The notes: a model not told the origin generated them from the sequence alone. Counted from the stretch's first letter, positions 31,863 through 62,648 are shown. The stretch: 64,000 nt of DNA from IMGVR_UViG_3300023174_000033:372001-436000, one strand, 5' to 3'. Numbers and translations are program-made.

Positions 31863-32180
31863 TTAGGATTCCAAAATATTTTTCAATTTTTTTTCTCTTA
31901 AATAATAAATTAATTTTTCCTCAGCCCATAAGAATATCTTAAGTCTTGGAATTAAGTATTCATCACTCCATCTTGTATGTTTTATATAACCTCTCAACTC
32001 CTCAATAGTTCTTTGAACCGAATCTAAATCATGGAAAAAATTTCCAGAAGAACCATAATACAAAAAAACTACCTTAGTATCATTTTCTAGTATCTTATGT
32101 CCATAAACCTCTGGTTCATATTCATCTATTATGAAATAATCATTCTTACAAAGGTCAGTAAATATTTTAAGCTGAGACAT
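31863..32180 (-). CDS. Hypothetical protein with C-tag (REKKLKNIL)
   Basis: ORF track. Confidence 0.7.
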   Translation of the reverse strand: MSQLKIFTDLCKNDYFIIDEYEPEVYGHKILENDTKVVFLYYGSSGNFFHDLDSVQRTIEELRGYIKHTRWSDEYLIPRLKIFLWAEEKLIYYLREKKLKNILES

Positions 32181-32196
32181 AGTAATATATACTTAT

Positions 32197-32721
32197 GTGA
32201 AATTCATTAAAAGTTATAAAATTTTTGAGGCAGATGGTACTTTTATGTATGACCCATCAATTGAAAGTATATTACCAGAATATATTAAGATAATTAAGGG
32301 GAATCCAAAAAACCCACTTAGATTAGCTTATAAAAAAGGTATATCAAGACACCTAGGACCAGAAGTTCAAATACCATATGAAACGATGGATAAGAATGGT
32401 GGTAGGGAAAATCCAGACACTTTAGAATTTGACATATATTGGAACTACGATACAAATACTAGTAGTTTAAATATAAATGTCGAAGTAAATTATGGTGATT
32501 TAACTGCTTGTCAATTCTCCATAGAAGCTCCTAATAAAGTTGATGTGATAGTATATACCTCATTACACTCAAAAGATGACCCATCAAATACCGTGTTTGC
32601 AATAGACGATGAAAGTTTGCAATCATTCTGTAATTACATCAACAAATGGGATCATGGTATCCATATAAATCGCGAAGATTTGAAGTTTATGGACAAGTAC
32701 GATAATTACTTACCTACTTGA
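32197..32721 (+). CDS. Hypothetical protein with N-tag variant (KFIKSYKIFEA)
   Basis: GTG start; TAATATATA at 32183. Confidence 0.7.
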   Translation: MKFIKSYKIFEADGTFMYDPSIESILPEYIKIIKGNPKNPLRLAYKKGISRHLGPEVQIPYETMDKNGGRENPDTLEFDIYWNYDTNTSSLNINVEVNYGDLTACQFSIEAPNKVDVIVYTSLHSKDDPSNTVFAIDDESLQSFCNYINKWDHGIHINREDLKFMDKYDNYLPT

Positions 32722-33956
32722 TTTCTATCCCAAGTTTCAATTCCAAGAATGTGATACACTTTATCACTTGGATCCTCTACTAAATCCTTCCTAATGGCCA
32801 ATTCCATAAGTAACAATTCCATTTCGTCGTTCAAATCATGGGATTCCAAATCATAGTTCTCAAGTATCTTTATACCTATAAGTGGGTCTTTTTGAAACTT
32901 TGATATAATCATATCAAATATTTCAATTTGTTTTGACAGAGACTTACCCCGCAAGTTCCTTGAGGAATTAGGTGCATGGTTTACCAACTTTGACAGTTTC
33001 TCTATATTAACGTTTTTTGGGTTTACGTCAAAATATCCATTGAAAGTTAAAGAAGAATCAATTATAGGGTGTAATTTGTACCAAGCTTTTTCATAGTCTT
33101 TCTTATGAAGAATATTTCTCATATAATAAAGATAATCCTTTGAAAGATGAAGTCCACTTATATCATCTTTCTTGTATTTATCACTATCCACTTTTGATTC
33201 TAAAGACCAGATATGATCACTTGACCCATAATTTGAGAGTAAGTAAACTTCCAAATCTTTTTCTCTAACCAATTTGAACCTTGATTTTAGGTCAGATTGA
33301 TATTTTTTGAACATTTTAGCATATCTGTCTTTGAATCTATACTTATGACTATCGATAAAACACCTACTTCCAATAATAGTAGCAATCAAATCCAATTCTA
33401 TCTCTGGTAAAGTAGCTTCCAAATCATACTTTTTCTTTACTAATCTGATAGCAGAGTGTGGTGGTGAACTTAAATTACAAAGACGCAACTCACCAGTTTT
33501 CAAAAATTCCTCAAAATCTTTTGTCCAAATAAATTGATCAGTTTCAATATCGTATCCAAGTTGACAAGAGTTTATATCAAATGAATCTAGTACTAGAGAT
33601 TTATCATCCGTGGTGGAAAAATATTCAATATTGTTATAAATACCATCTACAGACACTTTCTCAATAGTGTAGTAACCCTTTTGTTGATATCCTATATTAA
33701 GACCGGTGTAATCTTCATAAACCCATTTTTCATTTCTAATAAAATGTTGCTTTGATTTTAACTCTCTATTTGTAAAATCCTTTTTGACACCAATCAGATG
33801 ATAGATATCTAAATCATTCACTGGTGCATTCTTACCAGATATTATATTCCATACCACATTTCCGATTGATCCTCCTGCTAGAAAACCAGATTTTGGAAGT
33901 TCCCATTTTGATTTGATTTGGTCAAGTGCTTGACGAAAGATTTCTTGATATTTCAT
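32706..33956 (-). CDS. Pol-beta-superfamily nucleotidyltransferase-like protein
   Basis: GFLAGGS...NDLDIY and VLDSFDINSCQLG resemble the CCA/poly(A) polymerase head domain. Confidence 0.55.
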   Translation of the reverse strand: MKYQEIFRQALDQIKSKWELPKSGFLAGGSIGNVVWNIISGKNAPVNDLDIYHLIGVKKDFTNRELKSKQHFIRNEKWVYEDYTGLNIGYQQKGYYTIEKVSVDGIYNNIEYFSTTDDKSLVLDSFDINSCQLGYDIETDQFIWTKDFEEFLKTGELRLCNLSSPPHSAIRLVKKKYDLEATLPEIELDLIATIIGSRCFIDSHKYRFKDRYAKMFKKYQSDLKSRFKLVREKDLEVYLLSNYGSSDHIWSLESKVDSDKYKKDDISGLHLSKDYLYYMRNILHKKDYEKAWYKLHPIIDSSLTFNGYFDVNPKNVNIEKLSKLVNHAPNSSRNLRGKSLSKQIEIFDMIISKFQKDPLIGIKILENYDLESHDLNDEMELLLMELAIRKDLVEDPSDKVYHILGIETWDRNQVGK

Positions 33957-34036
33957 AATAATTTATTAGCACAAAAATATTAAATTTTTTTCAAAAAACA
34001 AAGATTTTATATTTTAAATCTTATATATAATTGTAT

Positions 34037-34189
34037 ATGAAAAAGGAAAAAAAGTGGAGTAAGAATTGGAAATATTTAGGCATAGGTTTGTTATTTTTAG
34101 CTATACCTGGTTCAACTTTTTTACTACCAGCGTTGTTGGCAAAAAAAATTCATGATAATAAGGATACAAACGATATTTTGGGCATATAA
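34037..34189 (+). CDS. 50-aa membrane peptide
   Basis: MKKEKKWSKNWKYLGIGLLFLAIPGSTFLLPALLAKKIHDNKDTNDILGI (manual translation). Confidence 0.55.
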   Translation: MKKEKKWSKNWKYLGIGLLFLAIPGSTFLLPALLAKKIHDNKDTNDILGI

Positions 34190-34211
34190 TGTTTAACTAA
34201 TTATACATTAC

Positions 34212-35309
34212 ATGGACAAAACATTTCTATTAACATTTATCATAGGTGGTTCTTTGGTTTATTTCAAACAATTTTTTTTGTTTTTATTTGAAAACATAAA
34301 AAATTTATTTATAACGAGCTTAAAAATTGAAGAATCTTCCTATTTTTTCTACTCATTCCAAAATTTTATACTTAATGAGTATAATAATAAGGTAAACAAT
34401 TTCTACTACAGGAACTTCTTTGATGATTGGATCGGTAAAGAATCAAACTTGAACTTATTTTACTCCTCGGGTTTTATCATAGTAAAATTTGAAGGTACAA
34501 AATTCCTAATTCTGAAAGCACAGAATAACATACAGAATTCTTTCAACCCATTCAAAGACACTAAACAATCTTTTCAAATTTATTGTTTCAATAAGAACAA
34601 ATTGAATAAATTAATTGAATATGTAGATAAATCATATGGCAGTAATTATATCAAATCTTATTATAACTTTAATGGTGAAGTAAAATGTTCAGGTAGAGTC
34701 ATAAATAAAACCTTTGAAAATATCTATCTTGATAATGGTATCGTTGAAGATTTGAAAAAAGATTTAGATCTTTTCGCATCATCAAAATCCATATACGATG
34801 AATATGGAATTAGATATAAAAGAACTTATCTTTTCTATGGACCTCCTGGAACTGGTAAGTCATCTTTATCTCTGGGAATCTCCAATTATACAAAAAGGGA
34901 TATACTTTCAATCAATATGTCCAAAGATATCACAGATGCTAATTTGATAAGTTTAATTGCTAATAGACCTACAAAATCCATAGTATTATTTGAAGATATT
35001 GATTGCTTATTGGATGATATTAATAGAAATGAAGAGACAAAAGATAAAGAAGTGAAAATTTCACTTTCATGTATACTGAACATACTTGATGGAATATATA
35101 CTCCTAACGATGTTATTTTCATAATAACAACGAATAATTTGGATAAAATTGACGATGCTATTAAAAGAAAAGGTAGAACCGATGTTTTATTGGAAGTCAA
35201 GAAACCAAATAAATACTTTATGGATGAATTGAAAGATAGGTTCAATATAAAAACCGAAAAGGATATTGATAATATTTCTCAACTTTATGAGGAAATAATA
35301 AATAATTAG
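34212..35309 (+). CDS. BCS1-like AAA+ ATPase with N-terminal TM anchor
   Basis: RTYLFYGPPGTGKSS Walker A, VLFEDID Walker B, SCILNILDG, ITTN, RKGRTD. Confidence 0.85.
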   Translation: MDKTFLLTFIIGGSLVYFKQFFLFLFENIKNLFITSLKIEESSYFFYSFQNFILNEYNNKVNNFYYRNFFDDWIGKESNLNLFYSSGFIIVKFEGTKFLILKAQNNIQNSFNPFKDTKQSFQIYCFNKNKLNKLIEYVDKSYGSNYIKSYYNFNGEVKCSGRVINKTFENIYLDNGIVEDLKKDLDLFASSKSIYDEYGIRYKRTYLFYGPPGTGKSSLSLGISNYTKRDILSINMSKDITDANLISLIANRPTKSIVLFEDIDCLLDDINRNEETKDKEVKISLSCILNILDGIYTPNDVIFIITTNNLDKIDDAIKRKGRTDVLLEVKKPNKYFMDELKDRFNIKTEKDIDNISQLYEEIINN

Positions 35310-35830: not shown

Positions 35831-36055
35831 ATGAAGAAAATTAGAGAATGGTTTGAATTACTACCAGAAGAGCATAAAGATAAAGCTCTAAAAAGTATGG
35901 TAAATGGAGAAAGCGAACAAGAATCTATGGTATCCGCACTATCAAATGGACTAATTTGGCAACATACCCCAGAGGGTAAAGAATATTGGTCCAAAGTATT
36001 TGATAAGTATTTACAAAAACTTATCATAAAAGATATAAAGGCAGAAAAAGTTTGA
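35831..36055 (+). CDS. Hypothetical protein (EWFExL module)
   Basis: Paralog of the previous N-terminus. Confidence 0.7.
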   Translation: MKKIREWFELLPEEHKDKALKSMVNGESEQESMVSALSNGLIWQHTPEGKEYWSKVFDKYLQKLIIKDIKAEKV

Positions 36056-36086
36056 TTTTATCAAACTTTTTTTTTACCTTTGTATT

Positions 36087-36589: not shown

Positions 36590-37075
36590 ATGCCAAACTG
36601 GGTTAAAAACAAATTATTTATTCACGGACCATCTGATAAGGTTAAAAAATGCACACTTGATATCGCAAGTGATAGTGAGCACATTTCCTTTGAGAAAATC
36701 CTACCAAGACCAAAGGATATTGGTGATGGTTGGTACGATTGGAGTGTAGAAAATTGGGGTACTAAATGGGACGCCGCAGATACCTATGAAGATGATGAAG
36801 GATACATCTGTTTTGATACTGCTTGGTCCACTCCACATGAATTAATGGGTACACTTTCAGAGAGATATTCAGATTTACTTTTTGAGGTTAAGTTTGCGGA
36901 CGAAGATTTAGGTAATAATTGTGGAATGTATCAATTTAAAGATGGTGATGAAATTGAATTTATGTCCTATGGAATCGAGGAGGCTTGTGATATTTGGGGA
37001 TATGATATTGAGGAAATTTTCCCCGATATCAAACGAGACAGGCAAATCGACAGAATTATAGGTGATGACGAATGA
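36590..37075 (+). CDS. Api92/YubB-type ferredoxin-like domain protein with C-tag (RDRQIDRII)
   Basis: WYDWSVENWGTKWDA, FDTAWSTP, FADEDLGNNCG. Confidence 0.7.
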   Translation: MPNWVKNKLFIHGPSDKVKKCTLDIASDSEHISFEKILPRPKDIGDGWYDWSVENWGTKWDAADTYEDDEGYICFDTAWSTPHELMGTLSERYSDLLFEVKFADEDLGNNCGMYQFKDGDEIEFMSYGIEEACDIWGYDIEEIFPDIKRDRQIDRIIGDDE

Positions 37076-38191: not shown

Positions 38192-39022
38192 TTATAAATC
38201 TGAAATTACAATAGTTTTTACAACTTTTATTCCAACGTCTCCAGGCAGTATTGTAATCACTAAAATTTCATTGTTATTGTTTTTCATAATACCATCTACA
38301 TCAATCACAATAATAATAGAAACATTATACTCTTCAAAATAAAATGAATATCTACCAGATACTAAAATTTCCTTTCCAATCATTGATGGGAATATCTTAT
38401 CTAAAAACCTTTTGAATATCCCATTGAAATGTTTTATTGATTGAAATGAACTTCTTTCAGCAATTCTTTTAGTTAAGTCATGTTCTGATGTATTATACCA
38501 CTTTACTTTGAATAATAACTTTTTACCATTCCACCTTTGTTTACAAGTATGCTGACTTACAAGTTTAACATCTGGTTCAGCTGGTGGTGGATTTAATTCT
38601 TTTGGTAGGTCTTTTATTAGATCAGCTAGTCTTGCTTCATTAACTTCAAGTGTGTCACTTAACATTTGTTTAACACCGTCCAACCCATCACACTTATAAT
38701 AATAACTATCAAATGTATTTTGATTGTAATCTTCAATAAAATACCAATCGTCATCATAGTGGAAAATGAAAATGACTTGATCTTTATTTATTGAAGTGTG
38801 GTAATATTCACTTGTGTTTGTTTGATAAATTTGTACTTTTGGCCAGTCTGGTGTTTTGTTGGATGGATCAAATATTTTTTTGAACAATCTTTCCAATCTT
38901 AATCTTTCTGATTCATTTACCCCATCATATTTAATTTTTGATGTTATATCACTGAATTTTCCCCTAGTAATTTTCTCATATTCACCACTACCAAATACAT
39001 CAAAACTTTCCAAATATTTCAT
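38192..39022 (-). CDS. N-tag family protein (two-domain)
   Basis: MKYLESF; DDDWYFI...YYKCDGLDG family motifs; TAATATATA at 39028. Confidence 0.75.
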   Translation of the reverse strand: MKYLESFDVFGSGEYEKITRGKFSDITSKIKYDGVNESERLRLERLFKKIFDPSNKTPDWPKVQIYQTNTSEYYHTSINKDQVIFIFHYDDDWYFIEDYNQNTFDSYYYKCDGLDGVKQMLSDTLEVNEARLADLIKDLPKELNPPPAEPDVKLVSQHTCKQRWNGKKLLFKVKWYNTSEHDLTKRIAERSSFQSIKHFNGIFKRFLDKIFPSMIGKEILVSGRYSFYFEEYNVSIIIVIDVDGIMKNNNNEILVITILPGDVGIKVVKTIVISDL

Positions 39023-39038
39023 CAGTTTATATATTAAA

Positions 39039-39066
39039 AAAACCCTCTGATTTCTCAGAGGGTTTT
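39039..39066. terminator. Intrinsic terminator
   Basis: AAAACCCTCTGA-TTTC-TCAGAGGGTTTT. Confidence 0.85.
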
Positions 39067-39068
39067 GA

Positions 39069-39581
39069 TTATTTATATCCTATTCCAAAGGCGACGACTT
39101 TGTCTTTTATAGATATTTGTTCTTGTTTGGAAAAATCCCATTCAATAACATAAGTGCCACTCTTACTAGCCAAAAAATCAAAGGTCTTTTTATTCTTGTC
39201 ACCTTTGTTTGATAAGAATAGTTTTCCATCGGCATCATATAAATTTATAGTCACAGGATGGGTGAACCCTGTTGATAAATCAACAATTCTGTATGGCTCA
39301 TTTGAATAAAGATCAAATGTAGCTTTTACAATAGCTTTATCCTTAAATTTACTATAGTCCTGTGATACAGAAGATTCATACTTATACTCACCTAACTTTT
39401 TTATACAATCATATTTTATAGTTCTACCACCATCAATTTGGTAAAAATCCATAAAAGAAGCAGAAATCTGAAATTCCTGATTCACAACATTCTCAAATTT
39501 GGGATCACTTACCCTAAACTGACTGTAGATGGATGTAACAATTAGAGTCACCAAGGCCATCAAAAACGAATTGTTTTTCAT
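39069..39581 (-). CDS. Hypothetical exported protein
   Basis: Signal-peptide-like N-terminus. Confidence 0.65.
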   Translation of the reverse strand: MKNNSFLMALVTLIVTSIYSQFRVSDPKFENVVNQEFQISASFMDFYQIDGGRTIKYDCIKKLGEYKYESSVSQDYSKFKDKAIVKATFDLYSNEPYRIVDLSTGFTHPVTINLYDADGKLFLSNKGDKNKKTFDFLASKSGTYVIEWDFSKQEQISIKDKVVAFGIGYK

Positions 39582-39714
39582 AACTTTAATTTTCTTTTTA
39601 GTCCAATAAATAATATGGGATATACTATATATTTTAGCTATGCGTCGGTAAAAAATCTACCCTCCACTAATTTTTAAAATTAGCAATATGAGTAAAAAAA
39701 TAAATTAAAATAAA

Positions 39715-40155
39715 CTAAAAATTTTCCTTTAAACACTCCTCAACACCTTCGATAGTATCACAAACCCACATTCTTGAATTTACATTTCTTGAACCAGGTG
39801 TCTCTGGTATAAAACATTCAATCAACCATATATCATCTTCCAGTTTTTGAATAACCAGATCGCATTTAAAAGGTATATCTAAATCAAAAACATATTCCCT
39901 TCTGTAATCAGTTAAACCTTCTCTATGAGTCATTTCATACTTTTGTTTATCTACATGAGCTAATGGAAATCCTTTGGATCTAATATACTCCTCTACAAAT
40001 CTATCTAAATTTTTATCTTCTTTTGGTGTTATATCATCTTGGTGACCCCAATATTCTAATTGTTCATAACTATGGGCAGTTAATCTATTATAGATCTTTC
40101 CTTCTAATTTATCATATGCTGATAGATTTTCATTAAATCTTTTTAAGTATTTCAT
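39715..40155 (-). CDS. N-tag paralog family protein
   Basis: MKYLKRFNE; EDDIWLI; WVCDTIEG. Confidence 0.75.
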   Translation of the reverse strand: MKYLKRFNENLSAYDKLEGKIYNRLTAHSYEQLEYWGHQDDITPKEDKNLDRFVEEYIRSKGFPLAHVDKQKYEMTHREGLTDYRREYVFDLDIPFKCDLVIQKLEDDIWLIECFIPETPGSRNVNSRMWVCDTIEGVEECLKENF

Positions 40156-52322: not shown

Positions 52323-52541
52323 ATGATTGGATTTGTTAGTTACCCAACACCAAATAAAACCTATAAACATTACAAGGGAGGTTTGTATAAAGTTCTTTTT
52401 TTATCCAAACATACCGAAACGGATGAAATATTAGTAAATTACCAATCAATTCTTTTTGGTTCTTATTATTCAAGACCACTAGAATCTTGGAATTCTACAA
52501 CAGAAAGAGGTGAACCACGTTTTAAAGAAGTTATACAATGA
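52323..52541 (+). CDS. DUF1653-family protein
   Basis: YKHYKGGLYKV...HTETDEILVNYQS...YSRPLESW. Confidence 0.8.
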   Translation: MIGFVSYPTPNKTYKHYKGGLYKVLFLSKHTETDEILVNYQSILFGSYYSRPLESWNSTTERGEPRFKEVIQ

Positions 52542-52972
52542 TTAAGGAAAAAGAATTTATCCTGAATAAAATAAAAATTGAAGGTGATGCAAAAGAATGG
52601 AACTATACTTGTAAAAATGGTATAGAATTCAAATGTTATATTCGTAGAGTTCCAAGAAGCGGACACCTTTGTGGTTATGTGCACCTAACACCTGATAACG
52701 ATTACTTTGGTTATGAATATGATCATATACCAGTAGATTGCCATGGTGGATTGACCTATAGTTCTGACCATGATGGTGAGTGGGTTATTGGATTTGATTG
52801 TGCTCACTTTGGTGATAATAAACCATTTTATTCCGATATGGAAATCTATGGGAATGATGGTACTTATAGAGATATGGAATATCTTACTAAAGAATGTGAA
52901 TCTATTTGTGAACAATTATCAACTAAAAGTAAATCACATTATAGAACAAAAAAATTAAATGAAATATTATGA
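52538..52972 (+). CDS. Conserved phage protein (HGGLTY..GFDCxH) with C-tag (RTKKLNEIL)
   Basis: GHLCGYV, CHGGLTYS, IGFDCAHFGD. Confidence 0.75.
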   Translation: MIKEKEFILNKIKIEGDAKEWNYTCKNGIEFKCYIRRVPRSGHLCGYVHLTPDNDYFGYEYDHIPVDCHGGLTYSSDHDGEWVIGFDCAHFGDNKPFYSDMEIYGNDGTYRDMEYLTKECESICEQLSTKSKSHYRTKKLNEIL

Positions 52973-53166: not shown

Positions 53167-53577
53167 ATGGAGTATATAAAATTATTTGAAAGTTTTTTTA
53201 GTGGTGGAATGCCTGAAGAAATCACCAGTGAACAATGGAATGAATTGCAAATAACAGAAAAAGATGAATATGGAGAAATAATCAAAAACTCTCCAATACC
53301 ACCTTATCTTTTTAGAGAAATTGTTGCAATTGGTGGTGCGGAAAGATACTTACCAACTAGAGAAGGTGGATCTATTCAGATGCACGGCAGAAGACCAAAC
53401 ACTAAACATTTATATGTTGTGTATTTTACACCCAAAGATGATGCTCCTTTTTATTTAATAAGATTTTCAACAGATAATAACCCACCAGAAAGAGTACAAA
53501 AGGAAAAGGGTTTTGTCAAGCTTTATGTAGCTGATGATTTTGAACAAGTGAAAAACTTTTGTAAAGAAAATCTATAA
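53167..53577 (+). CDS. N-tag paralog family protein
   Basis: MEYIKLFESF; YVADDFEQV. Confidence 0.72.
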   Translation: MEYIKLFESFFSGGMPEEITSEQWNELQITEKDEYGEIIKNSPIPPYLFREIVAIGGAERYLPTREGGSIQMHGRRPNTKHLYVVYFTPKDDAPFYLIRFSTDNNPPERVQKEKGFVKLYVADDFEQVKNFCKENL

Positions 53578-55192: not shown

Positions 55193-55266
55193 AGACAGGT
55201 GGCGCAATCGGTGAGCGCAGGACTCTTATACGGTCAAGGTTGTGGGTTCAAGTCCCATCCTGTCAA
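55193..55266 (+). tRNA. tRNA-Ile (anticodon UAU)
   Basis: Manual fold: acceptor GACAGG/CCTGTC (1:72 mismatch), D stem GCGC/GCGC, anticodon loop CT-TAT-AC, T arm GTGGG-TTCAAGT-CCCAT; CCA not encoded. Confidence 0.8.
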
Positions 55267-55323
55267 CAAATAAAATCTGTAAACAAAGAGGGCTAATAAT
55301 ATAAAATATTAAGATATATAAAA

Positions 55324-55397
55324 GGGCTCTTAACTCAGTAGGTCAGAGTGTCGGTCTCATAAACCGGAAGTCGTTGGTTCAAACCCAACAGGGCCCA
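55324..55397 (+). tRNA. tRNA with CAU anticodon (elongator Met or lysidine Ile2; not initiator)
   Basis: GGGCTCT/AGGGCCC acceptor, ACTC/GAGT D stem, loop CT-CAT-AA, GTTGG-TTCAAAC-CCAAC T arm. Confidence 0.88.
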
Positions 55398-55430
55398 CAC
55401 TTTTTTATTAAAAAAAACTAATTAACTAAC

Positions 55431-55673
55431 TTGTTCAAGAGTTCAGACTATTTCAACGTCGTATGTATCGAAAATTGTAAATCTACCAAAGAATTCTGGC
55501 CAATAACAATTGGTAAGCATTATCAAATCAAAAGTGGTTGGAAAACTTCAAATATTGCCTTCTATAACATAATAGCTGATGATGGAAAAGAATGGATAAT
55601 ACCATCTACTTTTTTCAAATATGTAGATGAAGTAAGAGAGATAAAGATAGAGGAAATCCTTACTGTAAATTAA
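55431..55673 (+). CDS. Small CI..GKxY family protein with C-tag
   Basis: VVCIE..ITIGKHYQI..FKYVDEVREIKIEEIL. Confidence 0.7.
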   Translation: MFKSSDYFNVVCIENCKSTKEFWPITIGKHYQIKSGWKTSNIAFYNIIADDGKEWIIPSTFFKYVDEVREIKIEEILTVN

Positions 55674-56401
55674 CCAGCTTTCCTCCTGCCAAGTGAATCT
55701 ATACTCCCATCATGCTTGAACTCACTAACCATTCCAGAAAGATAAATAGTTCCAAAATGGTAATCATCTTTCGGGTCAAATAAATAGTAATCATAACCCG
55801 TGAATATCTTATTATAGTCACTCATAAGTGTTCTCCACTCATTAGTTCTTCTTCCCACCGCCCATATATTCTTCGAATTTTTATAGTCATTGATGGGTAC
55901 ACTTAACAAATCATAATTATTTCCCTGTTTATATGGACTTGACTGTAACCAATCCTCAAATCCATCCCAACCATCAACTAACCACCAGTCTTTGACAAAA
56001 TAAATATCTTTGGTTCCTTTCAAAGTAAGGTGACTTGCATCTACTGGTAGTTCAGTTTGAATTAAAAAATAATCATCTTGGTATTTAGCTAGACTCATAT
56101 CTTTCCTAAATCCATTTGGAATTTCAACTTTCCAATTTACTTGATTGATTTTTCCTGAAGTACCAGTTGCTGGATAGAGTGATCGACTAACAAGTTGTAG
56201 ACCAGTTAGTTCTGGTTTTAAATATTTAGTAAATAACTTTTCAATTTGTAATAAATCACTTGAATTTAGTTCTTCTGTGCCCGGACTCTTTTCCATATCG
56301 AAGAAAAGGTCATTGAAAAGGTCTTGACCTAAATTTACATAGGTTGAACTTTTCAAATACTTTTCGTGTCTTGACTCATTGAATTTCCTTAAATATCTCA
56401 T
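55670..56401 (-). CDS. N-tag family protein (two-domain)
   Basis: MRYLRKFNES; QDDYFLI; TAATATATA at 56410. Confidence 0.75.
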   Translation of the reverse strand: MRYLRKFNESRHEKYLKSSTYVNLGQDLFNDLFFDMEKSPGTEELNSSDLLQIEKLFTKYLKPELTGLQLVSRSLYPATGTSGKINQVNWKVEIPNGFRKDMSLAKYQDDYFLIQTELPVDASHLTLKGTKDIYFVKDWWLVDGWDGFEDWLQSSPYKQGNNYDLLSVPINDYKNSKNIWAVGRRTNEWRTLMSDYNKIFTGYDYYLFDPKDDYHFGTIYLSGMVSEFKHDGSIDSLGRRKAG

Positions 56402-56419: not shown

Positions 56420-56641
56420 CTATCCGAGCAATATATTCAATTTATCATTTCTATGTTCATTTAAACGCTTGAACATTTTTATAGGATAGTGTCCCATTCT
56501 ATCATAGTCATTTACAACCCAACACAAATCAATATCATTAGTCAAAGTTAGATCGTATACTTTACCTATTACGAATGGACCTTCAATTATGGAATCCTCC
56601 CAATAGGTATTGTCTATACAGACTGCTTTTATTTTTTCCAT
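56420..56641 (-). CDS. Small CI..GKxY family protein with C-tag
   Basis: AVCID..IGKVYDL..FKRLNEHRNDKLNILL. Confidence 0.75.
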   Translation of the reverse strand: MEKIKAVCIDNTYWEDSIIEGPFVIGKVYDLTLTNDIDLCWVVNDYDRMGHYPIKMFKRLNEHRNDKLNILLG

Positions 56642-56966: not shown

Positions 56967-57712
56967 TTTTGTTTTTTCCATTCTTCAAAGTGATCGATTT
57001 GTGGTTGTGATAATTCAGATCCTATATAACTCATTCCCCTTTCAATACAAGCTTTAGCAGTAGTTCCAATTCCCATAAAACTATCATATACAAGTGAGTT
57101 GGGTTTAGCATAAATATCCATTAACTTAGTAATAAGTTCAGTAGAAAAAGTAGCTTTGTTTAGGGGATTAGAACCATCATTATTTCTAGCTTCAATAAAG
57201 TTATAGATATTCTCATAGTTAGCTTGCCCAGTTCTTTCAATTCTACCAGTTATTTTCTTATTAGCATCAAAGGTTTTGAATTCATTTTTCCTAGAAAAGA
57301 CAAAGATATATTCAACTATTCTTGTAAGTTTATTCTTACTCACATTATTTGGAATAGCATTTGATTTTTTCCAAACGATACAATCTGCTGTAATAAAGTT
57401 AGTTCTTCTAATAATATCAGCGATAACTAACCAAATTAAATGTGTTTTCTCACTTGAATAAGACATATTGTAAAGAACACAACCATTTGGTTTTAATATT
57501 TTATCATAACCATTAAAGACATCACAAGTCCAGTCAATATATTCTTGGTCTGTTTTGAAGTCTTGGAATATGTCATACCTACTGGAATATTTATCTGCTG
57601 CGCCAACTCTGGATGTATTATATGGTGGTGATGTAATGACCATATCAACCTGTCCTTGAAGTTCAGGTCTATTCATTGTATCAAAGCAGGATTCGTTATA
57701 AATTATATTCAT
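56963..57712 (-). CDS. Orphan DNA methyltransferase, beta class (N4-C/N6-A)
   Basis: ITSPPYN motif IV precedes VYDSFMGIGTT motif I. Confidence 0.92.
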   Translation of the reverse strand: MNIIYNESCFDTMNRPELQGQVDMVITSPPYNTSRVGAADKYSSRYDIFQDFKTDQEYIDWTCDVFNGYDKILKPNGCVLYNMSYSSEKTHLIWLVIADIIRRTNFITADCIVWKKSNAIPNNVSKNKLTRIVEYIFVFSRKNEFKTFDANKKITGRIERTGQANYENIYNFIEARNNDGSNPLNKATFSTELITKLMDIYAKPNSLVYDSFMGIGTTAKACIERGMSYIGSELSQPQIDHFEEWKKQK

Positions 57713-58098
57713 TTTAGTAGTTGTTCTATTCTTTGGTTTCTTTTTTCTTGTGGTTTTAAAACTGGATTATACTTGAAGTATCTATCAAACTTTAGTAACC
57801 AATATAGTGAATAAGGGTCAAAGTAAGTGATTAAGTTTCTATTCAAATAAACATTTTTTTGTAGCTCATAATGTCCATTTCTCCATCTATAAAACTTTCC
57901 TGTTATGTATAGGTTTTCATCTTCAGTTATTGTATTTCCATCAACACTTTCCCAAAGGTAAAACTTTTTATTAGGAAGGTCGTCATATACCTTTTTATAG
58001 TATTTCCATTTATTAAAGTTAGTCATAATAGAAGCAAACACAAATGGAATGAAACTAGCAATGACTACAACAAAAATATTAAAATGTAATGTAATCAT
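57709..58098 (-). CDS. Membrane-anchored hypothetical protein with C-tag (RNQRIEQLL)
   Basis: ORF track. Confidence 0.7.
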   Translation of the reverse strand: MITLHFNIFVVVIASFIPFVFASIMTNFNKWKYYKKVYDDLPNKKFYLWESVDGNTITEDENLYITGKFYRWRNGHYELQKNVYLNRNLITYFDPYSLYWLLKFDRYFKYNPVLKPQEKRNQRIEQLLK

Positions 58099-58422: not shown

Positions 58423-58459
58423 AACTTTTATATTTTTTTACAAAGATAAGGGATTAAGT

Positions 58460-58675
58460 TTAATTCTCCAAAATCTTTTGTAAAAAGTATTCTCTAATGA
58501 TTGACTTATCCCAAAAATATTTAGCTGGTATATCTACTCGTCTCCCAAGATTATCAATGGTTAAATAAAGAACACCATGTTCCATTTTTACTTCAACCAA
58601 TTCATATTCATCACCTAACTTTATATTAGCGTGATTTGCTGGTGAATAGTGTTCCTTAATACATTTGATTATCAT
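58460..58675 (-). CDS. Array gene 17: small CI family protein with C-tag
   Basis: IKCIK..LGDEYEL..REYFLQKIL. Confidence 0.7.
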   Translation of the reverse strand: MIIKCIKEHYSPANHANIKLGDEYELVEVKMEHGVLYLTIDNLGRRVDIPAKYFWDKSIIREYFLQKILEN

Positions 58676-58995
58676 AGGTTTAATATCTCATCTATATCAT
58701 CATCCCGTTTTTGTTCTTTGGATGGTAGTGCCACATCTACTAAATATACTTTGAAGTTAAGGATTTCTTCTTGGATACTACCATCTTTCATATCATAAAA
58801 CTCTTTATAAACAAACTTACCTTGGTAATCATTTGGATATTTACTATTATCTGGCACAAAATCAACAAACTCACCCCTTTGTCTTGGTACACCGCAATAA
58901 TCATCAAGATATTCTCTGATGTATTTGAGGGTTGGACCAACACAGATTGGTGTACCATCTTGTAATACCACATGGGAAAATTTTACTACTTTCAT
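58672..58995 (-). CDS. Array gene 16: unrelated body with C-tag
   Basis: ..RDDDIDEIL. Confidence 0.7.
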   Translation of the reverse strand: MKVVKFSHVVLQDGTPICVGPTLKYIREYLDDYCGVPRQRGEFVDFVPDNSKYPNDYQGKFVYKEFYDMKDGSIQEEILNFKVYLVDVALPSKEQKRDDDIDEILNL

Positions 58996-58996
58996 T

Positions 58997-59272
58997 TTAC
59001 AAAGATAATATATTTTCTATTTTTTCCTCTCTAATTTCTTCAATTGTTTTGAACTCTGAAATAGGGTAGTAGTATTTGGTTGTTCCCTTATCAGATTTTT
59101 CAATCAAATAATATCTTTTATCATCGTTTATTTTGGATGAAATATGACTACCAAACCAAACATAAGGATTTGTGTAAGGAGCCAAGGTATCTTCTCTTGG
59201 TAAGGCATTATACACTTTACCATCAGTTAATTCATCCCACTCAACATCAGTTTTGATTTTAATAACTTTCAT
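58997..59272 (-). CDS. Array gene 15: T.GKxY family with C-tag
   Basis: LTDGKVYNA..REEKIENIL. Confidence 0.72.
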   Translation of the reverse strand: MKVIKIKTDVEWDELTDGKVYNALPREDTLAPYTNPYVWFGSHISSKINDDKRYYLIEKSDKGTTKYYYPISEFKTIEEIREEKIENILSL

Positions 59273-59508
59273 TCTAATATTTTTTCTATTTGTTTTTCTC
59301 TGAATTCTATTATATCAATAAAGTATTCGTCAAATGTTATTTTACCAATAGAAAATCTATGTCTGCCAGTATTCACATCATATAGTTCAACTTTTACAGG
59401 TGGTCCAAATCCTTCATTACCATCATAGTTTAGGAAATAAGTAAAAGTATCTCCCTTTTCTACTGGTGTTTCTTTCATTGGTGATTTAATGCAAATACAT
59501 TTATTCAT
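59269..59508 (-). CDS. Array gene 14
   Basis: CICIK..KGDTF..REKQIEKIL. Confidence 0.72.
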   Translation of the reverse strand: MNKCICIKSPMKETPVEKGDTFTYFLNYDGNEGFGPPVKVELYDVNTGRHRFSIGKITFDEYFIDIIEFREKQIEKILE

Positions 59509-59735
59509 TTTAATATTTCATCTAATTGTTGTTGTCTCCATTTAGTTACTTCTACCATCTTAAACCTATCAGTATTAAGCATCCATTCACTAAATTGTTT
59601 TACTTTTAATTTATCATTTTTGGAAAAATAATTACCACTAACAAAAAGAACATTATATATTTTACCAGGTGTGAAATAGTGACACCTTGAATATTCATAT
59701 GGGTCGTTTTTAATACAGATATATTTTAGGTTCAT
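59505..59735 (-). CDS. Array gene 13
   Basis: YICIK..FTPGKIYNV..RQQQLDEIL. Confidence 0.72.
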   Translation of the reverse strand: MNLKYICIKNDPYEYSRCHYFTPGKIYNVLFVSGNYFSKNDKLKVKQFSEWMLNTDRFKMVEVTKWRQQQLDEILK

Positions 59736-59977
59736 TTTAATAGTTCATCTATTTGTTTTTCTCTGTATTCTTCTATAAAATCAAAATCTTCTATTGGCCA
59801 ATAGGAAAACTGGTCTCTATCATCTTCAACAATATAAGACATAATAACTTTATCTTTACCCGCTAAATAAATGTATTGACCTGAACCATATAAAGGTAGT
59901 GCTTCATATATTTTTCCATAAGTCAATCTTTCCCAGAAAGGTTCATTACCTGGTTTTCTTTTATACCTCAACTTCAT
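59732..59977 (-). CDS. Array gene 12
   Basis: LTYGKIYEA..REKQIDELL. Confidence 0.72.
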   Translation of the reverse strand: MKLRYKRKPGNEPFWERLTYGKIYEALPLYGSGQYIYLAGKDKVIMSYIVEDDRDQFSYWPIEDFDFIEEYREKQIDELLK

Positions 59978-60225
59978 TTTAATAGTTCATCTATTTGTTT
60001 TTGTCTAAAATCTTGTATATCCTCAAAATGACTTTTGAAATGTTTTTCTATTAGACCAAAGTCATACATACCATCTTTAACATCATAAAGATGAAAAGTT
60101 ATTTGGCGATTTCCAAGTGTATCACCAATTTTATCTACTTCATACCAGAACTTATCACCCTTTCTAACAGGTGTTCTTTTTCCTAAAAATTTCCTATCTT
60201 TTATACACACACAATAATTTCTCAT
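59974..60225 (-). CDS. Array gene 11
   Basis: CVCIK..KGDKF..RQKQIDELL. Confidence 0.72.
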   Translation of the reverse strand: MRNYCVCIKDRKFLGKRTPVRKGDKFWYEVDKIGDTLGNRQITFHLYDVKDGMYDFGLIEKHFKSHFEDIQDFRQKQIDELLK

Positions 60226-60578
60226 TCTAAAATCTTTTTTATTTTTATTTCTCTAATTGTTTCTTTACTGGCATACCTTTCTATAATAGATTTTTTTGGG
60301 TTGAAAGTCATAGGAGTAACTTGAAAACAAGATGGTTCAGATAGTAATTGGTCTATGGTTTCTTGTCTATATTCGTCAAGTGGTTTGAAATGTTCCAAAA
60401 AAATATCTGATGGAAGTCCAAGTATATAACGCAACCCACTCACATGGTGGTCTGATTTTTGATAAAGGTTCCATTGTAGTTCTTTTTTCATAGGTGGTAA
60501 AACCAAAAAAACATCACCTATTTTTGGTTTATGTTGAGTATAATACTGCCTATTTTTTATACAAATGTATTGTGTCAT
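60222..60578 (-). CDS. Array gene 10 (two C-tags)
   Basis: YICIK..RQETIDQLL..REIKIKKIL. Confidence 0.72.
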   Translation of the reverse strand: MTQYICIKNRQYYTQHKPKIGDVFLVLPPMKKELQWNLYQKSDHHVSGLRYILGLPSDIFLEHFKPLDEYRQETIDQLLSEPSCFQVTPMTFNPKKSIIERYASKETIREIKIKKILE

Positions 60579-60805
60579 TCTAAAAACTTTTCTATTTGTT
60601 CTTGTCTAAATTCATCAATCAATTTGAAATAATATTCTGGTACTACAATTGGGTGTCCTGTATCCGCAGTGACACCATATTGACTATCAAAATGAAAACT
60701 CCCATAATGTTTAACTTCATAAACCTTTCCAATAGTTAGTATTGCATTTCTACCATTTTTTTGTGGAGTATCCCAGTTTTTATTTCTTATACAAATTGCT
60801 TTCAT
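60575..60805 (-). CDS. Array gene 9
   Basis: AICIR..LTIGKVYEV..RQEQIEKFL. Confidence 0.72.
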   Translation of the reverse strand: MKAICIRNKNWDTPQKNGRNAILTIGKVYEVKHYGSFHFDSQYGVTADTGHPIVVPEYYFKLIDEFRQEQIEKFLE

Positions 60806-61005
60806 TTAAGTAACTCTTCTAATCTTATATTTCTCAATTCTGTAAGTGGTGTGAACATTTTTTCAATATAATGTTCTTTGGCTCCACCATCATCAACAAT
60901 ATAAATCCATACTACACTATTCCTATGGACTTCATAAATCTTACCTGGTGTGATATTAAATTGGATACCATTGGGTGTGATATTGGTTTTACAAACTACT
61001 TTCAT
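60802..61005 (-). CDS. Array gene 8
   Basis: VVCK..ITPGKIYEV..RNIRLEELL. Confidence 0.72.
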   Translation of the reverse strand: MKVVCKTNITPNGIQFNITPGKIYEVHRNSVVWIYIVDDGGAKEHYIEKMFTPLTELRNIRLEELLK

Positions 61006-61217
61006 TTTCCTAAAATATCATCAATGTTTTTATCCCTTTTATCAGCCTCATAGTTTTCCATAAAGTATTTTATCTGCTCTACTATATTCTTATCATTTTT
61101 TTCATTATTTTTAATCCTATCTTGTAGAGCAAAAAGTAAGGAATGTATTTGCTCCTTGAAATCTTCTTTTACAAAGAGTTTTTCCAACTTTTCTCTGAAT
61201 TCTGGGTCCAAGTTCAT
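61002..61217 (-). CDS. Array gene 7: helical unrelated body with C-tag
   Basis: ..RDKNIDDIL. Confidence 0.7.
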   Translation of the reverse strand: MNLDPEFREKLEKLFVKEDFKEQIHSLLFALQDRIKNNEKNDKNIVEQIKYFMENYEADKRDKNIDDILGK

Positions 61218-61444
61218 TTTAGTAGTTCTTCTAGTTTTTCTAATCTAACTTCATCAAGGGGTTTAAACCTACCTCTTCTTAAAGCAACCTCAATCCCATC
61301 ATTACCTATTATATAATATACACCATTATCATTAAATGTTGAATTCAGCCTATCTGTAACTTGGTAGATTTTACCAGAAGTCACAAAATCCATACCCAAT
61401 GCCTCATTAGTAACACCAGTATCATCTATACACACAACTTTCAT
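61214..61444 (-). CDS. Array gene 6
   Basis: VVCID..VTSGKIYQV..RLEKLEELL. Confidence 0.72.
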   Translation of the reverse strand: MKVVCIDDTGVTNEALGMDFVTSGKIYQVTDRLNSTFNDNGVYYIIGNDGIEVALRRGRFKPLDEVRLEKLEELLK

Positions 61445-61650
61445 TTTATTAATTGATTTATCTTATCTTGTCTTATTGATTGGAGTGGTTTAAACATATA
61501 TTCTGTATATTCACTATATTTGATTTTATATCCTTTATCATCTATGATATATTTAGCAAAGAAATAGTCATGAGGTGCTGTTATTACTTCATAGATTTTA
61601 CCTTCAGTAAAATTAAATATTTTGGTATTTATATTACAAACTATTTTCAT
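61441..61650 (-). CDS. Array gene 5
   Basis: IVCN..FTEGKIYEV..RQDKINQLI. Confidence 0.72.
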   Translation of the reverse strand: MKIVCNINTKIFNFTEGKIYEVITAPHDYFFAKYIIDDKGYKIKYSEYTEYMFKPLQSIRQDKINQLIK

Positions 61651-61874
61651 TTTAATAATTCGTCTAACTTTTCTTGTCTATATTGTTCTAACTCAATAAA
61701 TCTCCTTTTTGATAAAATCACTATTTTTCCACTATCATCATACAACTTATATGATTGTTCAGAACCATCATCAATTAACTCATATACTCTACCCAAAGTT
61801 AAAAAGATTTCTATTTTATCTGGGTTTTTACCCATCTTAGGAAAGGGATAATCATCTATACATACTACTTTCAT
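61647..61874 (-). CDS. Array gene 4
   Basis: MKVVCID at 61874..LTLGRVYEL..RQEKLDELL. Confidence 0.72.
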   Translation of the reverse strand: MKVVCIDDYPFPKMGKNPDKIEIFLTLGRVYELIDDGSEQSYKLYDDSGKIVILSKRRFIELEQYRQEKLDELLK

Positions 61875-62086
61875 AACAAAGTTTTTTCTAATTGCATTTC
61901 TCTCCATTCATCCAAAGATACAAATGATTTTGGACTTGTATAAATTGTTTCTCCAATATCATTTGTTATTTTCATAGCCAGTTTATCCTTGTTGGATTTC
62001 CAAATAGGGTTCCAAGAGTCAAGTGCTTCATATTGTTTCCCATATGTAAGATTGGGACAATTTTCTTTGATAAAAATAACTTTCAT
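61871..62086 (-). CDS. Array gene 3
   Basis: LTYGKQYEA..REMQLEKTL. Confidence 0.72.
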   Translation of the reverse strand: MKVIFIKENCPNLTYGKQYEALDSWNPIWKSNKDKLAMKITNDIGETIYTSPKSFVSLDEWREMQLEKTLL

Positions 62087-62325
62087 TTTAATAATTCGTC
62101 TAACTTTTCTAATCTAACTTCATCAAGTGGTTTGAACCTGTCCATCCTTAGTGATACTTCTTTACCATTATCACTGATAATATTTACCATATGAATACCT
62201 GATGGTTTATGTATACCACCTTTATTTGGATGGGAAATCATTTCATATACTTTTCCCTCTGTAATATGTTCATGTGGGGAAACCCCACCTTCTCTGATTT
62301 TATTGTTTATACAAACTAGTTTCAT
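62083..62325 (-). CDS. Array gene 2
   Basis: LVCIN..ITEGKVYEM..RLEKLDELL. Confidence 0.72.
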   Translation of the reverse strand: MKLVCINNKIREGGVSPHEHITEGKVYEMISHPNKGGIHKPSGIHMVNIISDNGKEVSLRMDRFKPLDEVRLEKLDELLK

Positions 62326-62648
62326 AGGATTTCTTCTATTTTTTTATTCCTAACTTCTTGGATGTTTTCACTATCAACCCATTTATTAAAATCTTCAACT
62401 GCGTTTTCTGAAGCATGTTGGTGGTAATACTCTTGATGTTTCACAAGTGATGGGTCAAGAGTTCCACCTTTCCCATCTGAATATGGAATAGGAACTGGAC
62501 TTACTTTATCTTGGATAAGACCAGGATAATGTTTTGTATATCCACAAGGTTTGCAAATAAAACGAATGCATCTATCATAAGAATCGTCTTTGATTTTTCC
62601 ACCACATTTTGGGCAAGGTTTTAAGTATTGTTCGCTATAACTTCCCAT
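62322..62648 (-). CDS. Array gene 1: zinc-ribbon protein with C-tag
   Basis: PCPKCGG..CKPCG..RNKKIEEIL; TATTTTTG at 62653-62660 upstream. Confidence 0.72.
   Translation of the reverse strand: MGSYSEQYLKPCPKCGGKIKDDSYDRCIRFICKPCGYTKHYPGLIQDKVSPVPIPYSDGKGGTLDPSLVKHQEYYHQHASENAVEDFNKWVDSENIQEVRNKKIEEIL

What the first reader, a model, noticed from the sequence alone, without database searches (positions are those of the whole stretch)
31863..62648. A portable C-terminal RxxKIxxIL tag on 23 mostly early-type proteins
Seen: the pattern R-x-x-[KQRx]-[IL]-x-x-[ILF]-[LI], within about 3 residues of the stop, ends all 17 genes of 58460-62648 plus 31863, 36590, 52538, 55431, 56420 and 57709; 60222 has it twice. 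The bodies include clearly unrelated folds: a small beta family, a zinc ribbon, an Api92-like ferredoxin domain, an HGG/GFDC protein, a membrane protein and a helical protein. It is absent from the metabolic, structural and N-tag proteins in this window. Inference: an amphipathic helix acting as a shared address or docking signal, for example recruitment to one hub or compartment, hetero-oligomerisation, export, or a timed degron. I know of no description of such a system; it is the best candidate for a new one here.
Basis: partly seen in the sequence, partly recalled or inferred. Interest (0 to 1): 0.85.

Follow-up and report, generated by a model that had tools for sequence, protein, structure and literature searches.

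The report
Shared C-terminal tag on phage proteins
Twenty-three small proteins of this huge phage, and hundreds of unrelated small proteins in many uncultivated phages, end in the same ten-residue peptide, which behaves like a transferable address label whose reader is still unknown.

Summary
In the window, 23 of 102 ORFs end in R-x-x-x-[IL]-x-x-[ILF]-[LI] within 4 residues of the stop; shuffles predict 0.08.

Sixteen of the 23 are paralogs of one SH3-like family, in which this helix is the ancestral C-terminus. Seven have unrelated bodies.

For two of those bodies (Api92-like and 'HGG/GFDC'), about 60 orthologs each keep the tag, with the Arg invariant. Their distant homologs end just before it. 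The tag was therefore grafted on and then kept by selection.

Conservation is at the peptide level: third codon positions are free.

The tag is not private to this phage. A variant, R-[DE]-x-K-L-[KN]-E-L-G-I-stop, ends 20 of 24 genes on one 7-kb contig. It ends 584 of 1355 genes in 120 metagenomic loci, on at least 215 unrelated body clusters. Of 371 strict matches, none is internal.

Tags are commoner before ATGA stop/start overlaps, but genes at the ends of operons keep perfect tags.

I found no description in the searchable literature, and none in the GenBank phages, IMG/VR or cultured genomes that I queried.

Most likely it is a handle at the chain end, read in the finished protein by a single reader.

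The parts
58460..62648 (-). Array of 17 head-to-tail genes, each ending in the tag. Thirteen are SH3-like paralogs, plus the divergent member 60222, the Zn-ribbon protein 62322, the helical protein 61002 and the orphan 58672.
   Evidence: Fifteen of the 16 junctions are ATGA overlaps; the other (58995/58997) is a 1-nt gap.
62322..62648 (-). Zn-ribbon protein (weak Lar-like similarity), body not SH3-like. Tag R-N-K-K-I-E-E-I-L at nt 62325-62351, followed directly by the stop.
62083..62325 (-). SH3-like paralog; tag at nt 62089-62115.
   Evidence: The AF2 model has five strands plus helix 67-79. SH3 domains are the top Foldseek hits.
61871..62086 (-). SH3-like paralog with a degenerate tag (Thr at the eighth place), nt 61877-61903.
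61647..61874 (-). SH3-like paralog (start corrected to 61874); tag at nt 61653-61679.
61441..61650 (-). SH3-like paralog; tag at nt 61447-61473.
61214..61444 (-). SH3-like paralog; tag at nt 61220-61246.
61002..61217 (-). Small helical protein, body not SH3-like; tag R-D-K-N-I-D-D-I-L at nt 61011-61037.
60802..61005 (-). SH3-like paralog; tag at nt 60808-60834.
60575..60805 (-). SH3-like paralog; tag at nt 60581-60607 (Phe at the eighth place).
60222..60578 (-). Divergent SH3-like paralog with two tags: an internal one at nt 60342-60368, then a Pro-rich spacer and a terminal one at nt 60228-60254.
   Evidence: The second module recurs on orthologs of two different paralogs.
59974..60225 (-). 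SH3-like paralog; tag at nt 59980-60006.
59732..59977 (-). SH3-like paralog; tag at nt 59738-59764.
59505..59735 (-). SH3-like paralog; tag at nt 59511-59537.
59269..59508 (-). SH3-like paralog; tag at nt 59275-59301.
58997..59272 (-). SH3-like paralog; tag at nt 59006-59032.
58672..58995 (-). 107-aa orphan, body not SH3-like by HMM. Pro/Ser/Lys linker, then tag R-D-D-D-I-D-E-I-L at nt 58681-58707.
58460..58675 (-). SH3-like paralog, last gene of the array. It ends in a TAA stop and is followed by a promoter-like site rather than an overlapping gene. Tag at nt 58469-58495.
57709..58098 (-). Membrane-anchored protein: an N-terminal hydrophobic segment, then a Lys-rich stretch. Pro-containing linker, then tag at nt 57715-57741.
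56420..56641 (-). Dispersed SH3-like paralog with a TAG stop; tag at nt 56426-56452.
55431..55673 (+). Dispersed SH3-like paralog (TTG start) on the other strand, convergent with 55670-56401, so it has no downstream gene. Tag at nt 55635-55661.
   Evidence: ortholog P0125 keeps it
52538..52972 (+). 'HGG/GFDC' protein. Ser/Lys linker, then tag R-T-K-K-L-N-E-I-L at nt 52943-52969. The tag is a lineage-specific extension.
36590..37075 (+). Api92-like (DUF1281_C) protein; tag R-D-R-Q-I-D-R-I-I at nt 37034-37060, followed by G-D-D-E. The tag is a lineage-specific extension.
31863..32180 (-). 105-aa orphan; tag R-E-K-K-L-K-N-I-L at nt 31872-31898. TAA stop, and no called gene for 132 nt downstream.

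Best explanation
The tag is a modular recognition peptide specific to the C-terminus. It began as the C-terminal helix of a very large family of about 70-aa SH3-like phage proteins. It has been grafted, usually through a short Pro/Ser/Lys linker, onto hundreds of unrelated small, mostly soluble, cytoplasmic accessory proteins.

On a helical wheel the conserved residues fall within a 100-degree arc: Arg at position 0, aliphatic at +4 and +7, and aliphatic at +8 (or Gly +8, Ile +9). Lys or Arg is usual at +3. So the tag presents one small binding face with a buried charge.

I propose that this face is read in the finished protein by a single trans-acting reader that needs the motif at the chain end. 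That would give a whole class of accessory proteins one common fate.

Shown: modularity, selection on the peptide, predicted helix, strict terminal position, independence from a downstream gene, and spread across many phages.

Inferred: that a reader exists and what it does. My ranking of outcomes is: (i) hand-over to a machine that reads C-termini, such as a ClpX-type AAA+ unfoldase/protease, which would set the lifetime of the class (about 0.25 overall); (ii) recruitment to a phage assembly or the virion (about 0.1); (iii) another hub.
For: Enrichment: 23 tagged ORFs against 0.08 expected.

Unrelated bodies: seven in the window, 14 of 20 on L010, and at least 215 body clusters in 120 loci.

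Grafting followed by purifying selection: 57 Api92-like orthologs at 40-94% identity keep R149 and I153 at 100% and I156 at 91%, while homologs at 30-50% identity stop before the tag. Sixty-six 'HGG' orthologs keep R136 at 100%, K139 at 95% and the aliphatic positions at 95-100%, while Burkholderia and Ralstonia-type homologs lack the extension. T5-family homologs of L010:429-803 align only up to residue 107 of 124.

Peptide-level constraint: information sits in codon positions 1 and 2, and Arg, Leu and Gly codons vary freely.

Separable and terminal: multi-repeat proteins carry the beta domain without the tag between repeats, and two-domain proteins have it only at the very end. Of 371 strict L-G-I matches, 337 are at the last residue, 34 within 3 of it and none internal.

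Helix: AF2 gives helix 67-79 at pLDDT about 90 in an SH3-like member. In the Api92-like protein it gives helix 145-158 at pLDDT 75-82 after Pro145, against 95 or more for the body.

No downstream gene needed: 14 clean operon-terminal genes, 10 of them convergent, keep consensus tags, and so does window gene 55431.

Cytoplasmic location.

The L-L and L-G-I forms occur together in 40 of 64 loci, which is consistent with one reader.
Against: No reader was identified. No untagged gene co-occurs with the arrays in more than 8 of 120 loci.

A tag on 43-85% of the genes in an array is an unusually high load for a docking site.

Tags are significantly commoner where the next gene overlaps by ATGA: 85% against 48% for array-terminal genes, OR 5.9, p 8e-9. 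This hints at a link with translational coupling or with cassette history.

Mini-proteins of 35-39 aa that are little more than a tag exist.

The residues after the motif vary in the L-L form (0-4 in the window, up to about 8 elsewhere), so a free carboxylate in fixed register cannot be universally required.

I could not inspect model coordinates, so I cannot say whether the helix packs on the SH3-like barrel.
Confidence: 0.5

Rival explanations
1. Self-association handle. The helices of co-expressed tagged proteins bundle with each other, or dock onto the SH3-like domains that always accompany them. This would build mixed assemblies that a tagged membrane protein could anchor.
For: SH3-like paralogs occur with the other tagged bodies in the window, L010, L021 and L022. 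Both the window array region and L010 include a membrane protein carrying the same tag. Natural double-tag proteins suggest that valency matters. Some eukaryotic SH3 domains bind R-x-x-K peptides (own knowledge).
Against: Nine or ten residues is short for a stable bundle. Lys at +3 is only 50-75% conserved. Self-association does not explain the total absence of internal copies. The co-occurrence is partly built in, because most loci were found through the SH3-like family or the tag itself.
Confidence: 0.15
2. Co-translational signal. As the last ten residues in the ribosomal tunnel at the stop codon, the peptide modulates termination or ribosome release. That would favour re-initiation at the overlapping start of the next gene in hosts that do not use Shine-Dalgarno pairing.
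For: The position is strictly terminal (337 of 371 exactly at the end). The tag is indifferent to the protein body. It is present on most genes of polycistronic arrays. It is enriched before ATGA overlaps (OR 5.9). The probable Bacteroidota host initiates translation without SD pairing (own knowledge).
Against: Perfect tags persist on genes with no downstream gene (window 55431, 31863). The distance to the stop varies in the L-L form. The conserved residues follow helical periodicity and lack the Pro/Trp features usual in known arrest peptides. Orthologs of dispersed genes keep the tag over long divergence.
Confidence: 0.12
3. Generic intramolecular cap. A cheap C-terminal helix that stabilises or solubilises fast-evolving small proteins, or protects their ends from host proteases, with no external partner.
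For: Tagged bodies are mostly orphans; 115 of 119 representatives have no Pfam match. The helix is confidently predicted in the SH3-like family.
Against: An invariant Arg on the same face as the aliphatic residues, across unrelated folds, argues for one common partner surface. Flexible Pro/Ser/Lys linkers separate the tag from well-folded bodies. The Api92-like and 'HGG' families fold without it elsewhere.
Confidence: 0.1
4. Nucleic-acid element or recombination scar. The conserved 3' end is the translation-initiation region of the next gene, or a cassette boundary used in gene shuffling, and the peptide is a by-product.
For: 18 of 23 tagged window genes overlap the next start by ATGA. Codons ending in A are somewhat over-used in the tag, for example ATA 67% against 35% background. 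Junctions on L010 share 9-12 nt microhomology.
Against: Third codon positions carry little information. On L010 all six Leu codons, four Arg codons and three Gly codons are used. Tags occur before TAA and TAG stops followed by gaps and at operon ends. There is no Rfam match. Microhomology may explain how tags spread, but not why Arg, Ile and Leu are kept.
Confidence: 0.04

Closest known systems
T4 capsid targeting sequence (CTS) of internal proteins
   Same: A peptide of about 10 residues is the only feature shared by a highly diverse, fast-evolving set of small phage proteins, several of them anti-defence. It serves as their common address (PMC3012670).
   Different: The CTS is N-terminal, is removed by the prohead protease and marks a handful of proteins. 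This tag is C-terminal, has a different sequence and marks up to 85% of the genes in an array. Packaging was not tested. The window's separate N-terminal M-K-Y-L-K-x-F-E tag looks more like a CTS than this one does.
Encapsulin cargo-loading peptides and microcompartment encapsulation peptides (own knowledge)
   Same: Short terminal peptides or helices, joined by a flexible linker, that send unrelated cargo proteins to one protein shell. Encapsulation peptides have an h-x-x-h-h-x-x-h-h type pattern.
   Different: The consensus is different. I saw no shell gene linked to the arrays, and there are far more tagged proteins per genome.
C-terminal degrons read by ClpX (ssrA tag, MuA C-terminus) (own knowledge)
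   Same: They act only at the chain end, are transferable to any protein, and are read by a host machine. The MuA end combines basic residues with a final A-I, which loosely resembles K-x-x-L-G-I.
   Different: The sequences do not match known ClpX motifs. The L-L form tolerates variable tails. Degradation was not tested.
Helical docking motifs such as the L-x-x-L-L box, and R-x-x-K ligands of SH3 domains (own knowledge)
   Same: Two or three turns of helix present a few aliphatic residues and a charge to a groove on a hub protein.
   Different: Those motifs work at internal positions too. This one is never internal.
DUF6501 / DUF7244 standalone SH3-like phage proteins; B. subtilis SPbeta YorP (2heq)
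   Same: The body of the founding family is a five-stranded SH3-like barrel.
   Different: The Pfam models end before the helix, and their multi-repeat members lack it. No function is known for them either.

Membership tests
SH3-like small beta family (Pfam DUF6501 PF20111 / DUF7244 PF23896) | Match to the family HMM above the curated cut-off | tested here: inconclusive
   Window members fall below the cut-off (best: DUF7244, E 0.094). Relatives found with the window profile pass it: P0010, P0145, P0121 and P0129 match DUF6501 at 25-73 bits against a cut-off of 23.8.
SH3-like small beta family (Pfam DUF6501 PF20111 / DUF7244 PF23896) | Five-stranded SH3-type barrel | tested here: met
   AF2 gives pLDDT 82.9 and five strands. 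The top Foldseek PDB hits are SH3 domains (probability 0.99, E 0.07) and YorP. The Atlas structure neighbours are DUF6501 and SH3.
Api92-like DUF1281_C (gene 36590) | Pfam match above cut-off and the same fold as Api92 | tested here: met
   PF18406 at 61.3 bits against a cut-off of 22.8. The model has pLDDT 92.3. Foldseek matches 2ijr at probability 1.00.
T4-type capsid targeting sequence | N-terminal position on the precursor | tested here: not met
   The tag is exclusively C-terminal.
T4-type capsid targeting sequence | Tagged proteins are packaged into the prohead and the tag is removed by the prohead protease | not testable with these tools
   No virion proteome exists for this uncultivated lineage.
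ClpX-type C-terminal degron | Motif at the extreme C-terminus with a free carboxylate in fixed register | tested here: inconclusive
   In the L-G-I form, 337 of 371 matches are exactly terminal. In the L-L form of the window, 0-4 variable residues follow the motif.
ClpX-type C-terminal degron | Tag shortens the half-life in a ClpXP-dependent way | not testable with these tools
   Needs an experiment.
Nascent-chain arrest or termination peptide | Fixed distance from the stop codon | tested here: inconclusive
   The distance is fixed in the L-G-I form and variable in the L-L form.
Nascent-chain arrest or termination peptide | Function tied to a downstream coupled gene | tested here: not met
   14 operon-terminal genes keep consensus tags, although tags are enriched before ATGA overlaps.
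Integron-like cassette boundary or conserved RNA/DNA element | Conservation at the nucleotide level, or a conserved structure | tested here: not met
   Third codon positions are free. There is no Rfam family. Terminator and promoter scans over the array are at chance level.
Encapsulin or microcompartment targeting peptide | A shell gene linked to the cargo genes | not tested
   No shell family appeared in the Pfam scans I ran on a subset of window ORFs. I made no dedicated search.

The most novel reading that the evidence does not exclude
The tag is a label carried by much of the accessory proteome of a large, uncultivated group of phages, probably infecting Bacteroidota. It is read only at the chain end by a dedicated and so far unknown reader. 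That would be either a new class-wide sorting or turnover pathway for phage accessory proteins, or a peptide that acts at translation termination. Either way, one ten-residue peptide would control the fate of hundreds of otherwise unrelated orphan proteins, and it could be reused as a portable handle.
Probability: 0.35. Interest if true: 0.9.

Novelty: new variant of a known kind. Interest (0 to 1): 0.8.

Why it matters
Small orphan genes make up most of the unexplained content of phage genomes. Here a single ten-residue peptide links hundreds of them, across phages of 23-51% GC, into one functional class. That class can be probed with one experiment: tag fusion, pull-down or half-life measurement.

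If a reader exists, finding it would expose a hub that these phages depend on. It would also give a way to enumerate accessory and host-takeover proteins from sequence alone, and would provide a compact transferable handle.

The tag also shows how a piece of one protein family can become a general module. And it offers a marker for a widespread freshwater and marine phage group that was absent from the cultured genomes and phage records I queried.

Tried and rejected
**Known families.** Pfam and PHROGs scans of the tagged proteins gave no informative family apart from Api92-like and weak Lar/Zn-ribbon similarity.

**Solved structures.** A sequence search of the PDB gave nothing significant.

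**GenBank phages.** Megablast of 12 kb of the window found no match. tblastn with two SH3-like members found no match. Api92-like and T5-family homologs in cultured phages lack the tag.

**IMG/VR.** The profile scan confirmed no relative. A DNA pattern for the tag gave only 4 chance hits.

**GTDB genomes.** There were 12 pattern hits. Only two are real, and both are small contigs in MAG bins.

**tmRNA link.** I asked whether the tag mimics a phage tmRNA tag, because SmpB lies next to tagged genes in L001 and L002. No tmRNA was found.

**Other checks.**
- RNA families: tRNAs only.
- Sigma-70 promoter and terminator scans over the array: at chance level.
- Linked reader gene: none is common to the loci.
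- Amphipathicity by hydrophobic moment: not raised, because the Arg sits on the aliphatic face.
- Literature: six searches, including motif strings, found no description.

**Limits.** I could not inspect model coordinates or run complex predictions, so helix packing and tag-reader docking remain untested.

Full report
**What the window is.** The window is AT-rich (about 30% GC over most of its length) and densely packed with genes. These include ribonucleotide reductase, thymidylate synthase, adenylosuccinate synthetase, a full DnaJ, an M12 peptidase, a DNA methylase and collagen-repeat proteins, plus two tRNAs. One tagged protein is identical to a protein recorded on a 464,605-bp contig, and a close paralog lies on that contig and on a 295,671-bp contig. 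Those contigs encode SmpB, PRPP synthetase and an integrase. The window therefore comes from a huge uncultivated phage. A Bacteroidota-type promoter pattern (TTTG, 17-23 nt, TAnnTTTG) occurs 17 times against 6.3 +/- 2.5 expected, often just upstream of genes. A related locus encodes a protein with a type IX secretion CHU_C domain. Both point to a Bacteroidota host. That assignment is an inference.

**The observation.** Twenty-three of 102 ORFs match the pattern within 4 residues of the stop, against 0.08 expected from 2000 shuffles. Internal matches (2) are no more than chance. The minor corrections are listed in the observation check. A scan of every stop-to-stop frame found no additional tagged gene.

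**One family plus seven grafts.** Sixteen tagged proteins align as one family: M-K-v-V-C-I-x-N ... G-K-x-Y-E ... D-D-x-G ... F-K-P-L-x-E-h-R-x-x-K-L-x-E-L-L-K. AF2 with 121 sequences gives five strands and a C-terminal helix (pLDDT 82.9). The best structural matches are SH3 domains and the SPbeta protein YorP, and relatives match DUF6501 and DUF7244. An exhaustive profile search found 3056 representative clusters at E <= 0.001. Of the 129 single-domain representatives listed, 125 carry the tag. The tag is nevertheless separable from the barrel. Multi-repeat proteins string 3-12 barrels together without any tag between them, and two-domain proteins carry it only at the very end. An HMM of the barrels alone does not recognise the other seven tagged window proteins (E > 0.9). 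One of those seven is a confirmed Api92-like protein.

**Grafting and selection.** Among 57 Api92-like orthologs (40-94% identical), the extension P-[DE]-I-[KY]-R-D-x-x-I-[DN]-x-[IL]-[IL] is always present. R149 and I153 are invariant and I156 is 91% conserved, as well kept as the core of the domain. More distant homologs end right after the last conserved body motif with an acidic tail and have no tag. The 'HGG/GFDC' protein 52538 shows the same picture. Sixty-six orthologs keep S-K-S-K-S-H-x-R-x-x-K-[IL]-N-x-[IL]-[IL], with R 100%, K 95% and aliphatic positions 95-100%. Burkholderia and Ralstonia-type homologs stop at the end of the body helix. On non-family bodies only the nine or ten core residues are shared, and a Pro/Ser/Lys-rich linker precedes them.

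**Peptide, not nucleic acid.** In the window's 23 tags, information lies in codon positions 1 and 2 of the Arg and aliphatic codons. Third positions are nearly free, apart from a mild excess of A-ending codons. On the 48.6%-GC contig L010, the same peptide is written with four Arg, six Leu and three Gly codons and is followed by TGA, TAA or TAG. There is no Rfam match.

**The tag is widespread.** L010 was found through a family member ending in L-G-I. Twenty of its 24 genes end in R-[DE]-x-[KR]-L-[KN]-[ED]-L-G-I (0.008 expected). Six are SH3-like and 14 have other bodies, including a membrane protein, a Zn-ribbon-like protein, a 35-aa mini-protein and a member of a family present, untagged, in T5. 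In their 540 kb, 584 of 1355 crude genes are tagged. Of these, 157 are SH3-like and 427 are not, and the tagged bodies form 259 BLAST clusters, of which 215 contain no SH3-like member. Only 4 of 119 representatives of the non-SH3 bodies match any Pfam family. Another contig (L004, 23% GC) carries more than 55 tandem SH3-like copies. Both tag forms occur in the same loci. The tag was not found in the GenBank phages I queried, in IMG/VR by pattern, or in cultured bacterial genomes.

**Constraints on mechanism.**
- The position is absolute. Of 371 strict L-G-I matches in 153,082 residues, 337 are the last residues, 34 lie within 3 of the end and none is internal.
- On a helix, R0, h+4, h+7 and h+8 sit at 0, 40, 340 and 80 degrees. 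That places a buried charge inside a small aliphatic patch, which explains the unremarkable hydrophobic moment.
- About 95% of tagged proteins lack a hydrophobic segment. In single-pass ones, positive charge follows the segment, so the tag faces the cytoplasm.
- Among genes that are themselves coupled to an upstream gene, 85% of those followed by an ATGA overlap are tagged, against 48% of array-terminal ones (seed matches excluded; OR 5.9, p 8e-9). Even so, 14 clean operon-terminal genes, ten with a convergent neighbour, keep consensus tags, as does window gene 55431.
- No untagged gene accompanies the arrays in more than 8 of 120 loci.

**Interpretation.** The evidence fits a transferable handle, specific to the chain end, that is read in the finished protein by one reader (confidence about 0.5). 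The outcome is open. A C-terminus-reading AAA+ machine that sets the lifetime of the whole class is my first guess, and recruitment to an assembly or the virion my second. The rivals are self-association, possibly with the SH3-like domains as receptors (0.15); a termination-linked nascent-peptide effect (0.12); a generic stabilising cap (0.1); and a nucleic-acid element or recombination scar (0.04). The association with ATGA overlaps may also reflect how tags spread, through cassette exchange at junctions with short microhomology.

**Comparison and novelty.** The logic matches the T4 capsid targeting sequence, in which a short peptide is the only shared feature of a diverse set of small phage proteins (PMC3012670). 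It also matches encapsulation and cargo-loading peptides and C-terminal degrons (own knowledge). It fails the defining features of each that could be tested: position for the CTS, consensus for the others. Six literature searches found no description. I rate it a new variant of a known kind (shared terminal address peptides), of unusual scale and with an unknown reader.

Noticed in passing
window 19543-23482, 38192-41898, 53167-53577, 55670-56401, 62672-63917: Thirteen proteins of 123-560 aa start with M-[KRE]-[YHN]-[LI]-[KRQ]-x-[FL]-[EN] (the 'N-tag'). None carries the C-tag. The same start occurs on unrelated proteins in other loci (P0253, L084, L032). It resembles the T4 capsid targeting sequence in position, length and flavour, so these may be packaged proteins. 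Several N-tag paralogs also end in an L-x-x-L-L-type helix that lacks the Arg.
   Followed up: partly
L004 3630-15068 (ENA contig of 45.6 kb, 23% GC): More than 55 head-to-tail SH3-like genes of 63-71 aa, many overlapping by 11 nt, so that the tail E-D-E-S-stop of one gene is read as M-K-V-K of the next. This is an extreme tandem amplification of one small gene.
   Followed up: partly
window, 17 sites, e.g. 58441-58472(-), 36051-36082(+), 33972-34002(-), 42869-42900(+): The Bacteroidota-type promoter pattern TTTG-N17-23-TAnnTTTG is enriched (17 against 6.3 expected) and often ends only 5-20 nt before a start codon. A TAnnTTTG also abuts the first gene of the tagged array (about 62655-62662, minus strand). 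This suggests host-RNAP transcription with very short or no leaders.
   Followed up: partly
L001 10001-11184; L002 6581-7764: In the 296-kb and 465-kb relatives, three tagged genes lie directly upstream of a phage SmpB gene. No tmRNA was found in these stretches.
   Followed up: partly
window 12099-13334 and 11034-12068: A full-length adenylosuccinate synthetase (Pfam E 1e-166) and a complete class-A DnaJ (J domain, Zn finger, C-terminal domain) are encoded side by side in a phage. I did not test whether the synthetase is a PurA or a PurZ-type enzyme.
   Followed up: no
window 1050-6074 and 49398-52208: Very long collagen-repeat (G-x-y) proteins. The first pair (1050-4484 and 4497-6074) is separated by only 12 nt, so it could be one gene interrupted by a stop. 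GC rises to 41-44% in these repeats.
   Followed up: no
window 34212-35309: A membrane-anchored AAA ATPase (phrog_7485, E 6e-57) lies 1.3 kb upstream of the tagged Api92-like gene. It is a conceivable reader or translocase, but I have no evidence linking the two.
   Followed up: no
window 47621-48100: Ends in R-A-E-Y-I-L-N-I-L-N-P-M-V, which fits the regex but has atypical polar positions.
   Followed up: partly
window 55193-55398: tRNA-Ile(TAT) and tRNA-Met(CAT) lie immediately upstream of the lone plus-strand tagged gene 55431-55673, which starts with TTG.
   Followed up: no
L087 3261-6389: A 1042-aa protein with GEVED, Ig/PKD and type IX secretion CHU_C domains sits on a 59-kb contig that carries tagged genes. 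This hints that the hosts are Bacteroidota.
   Followed up: partly
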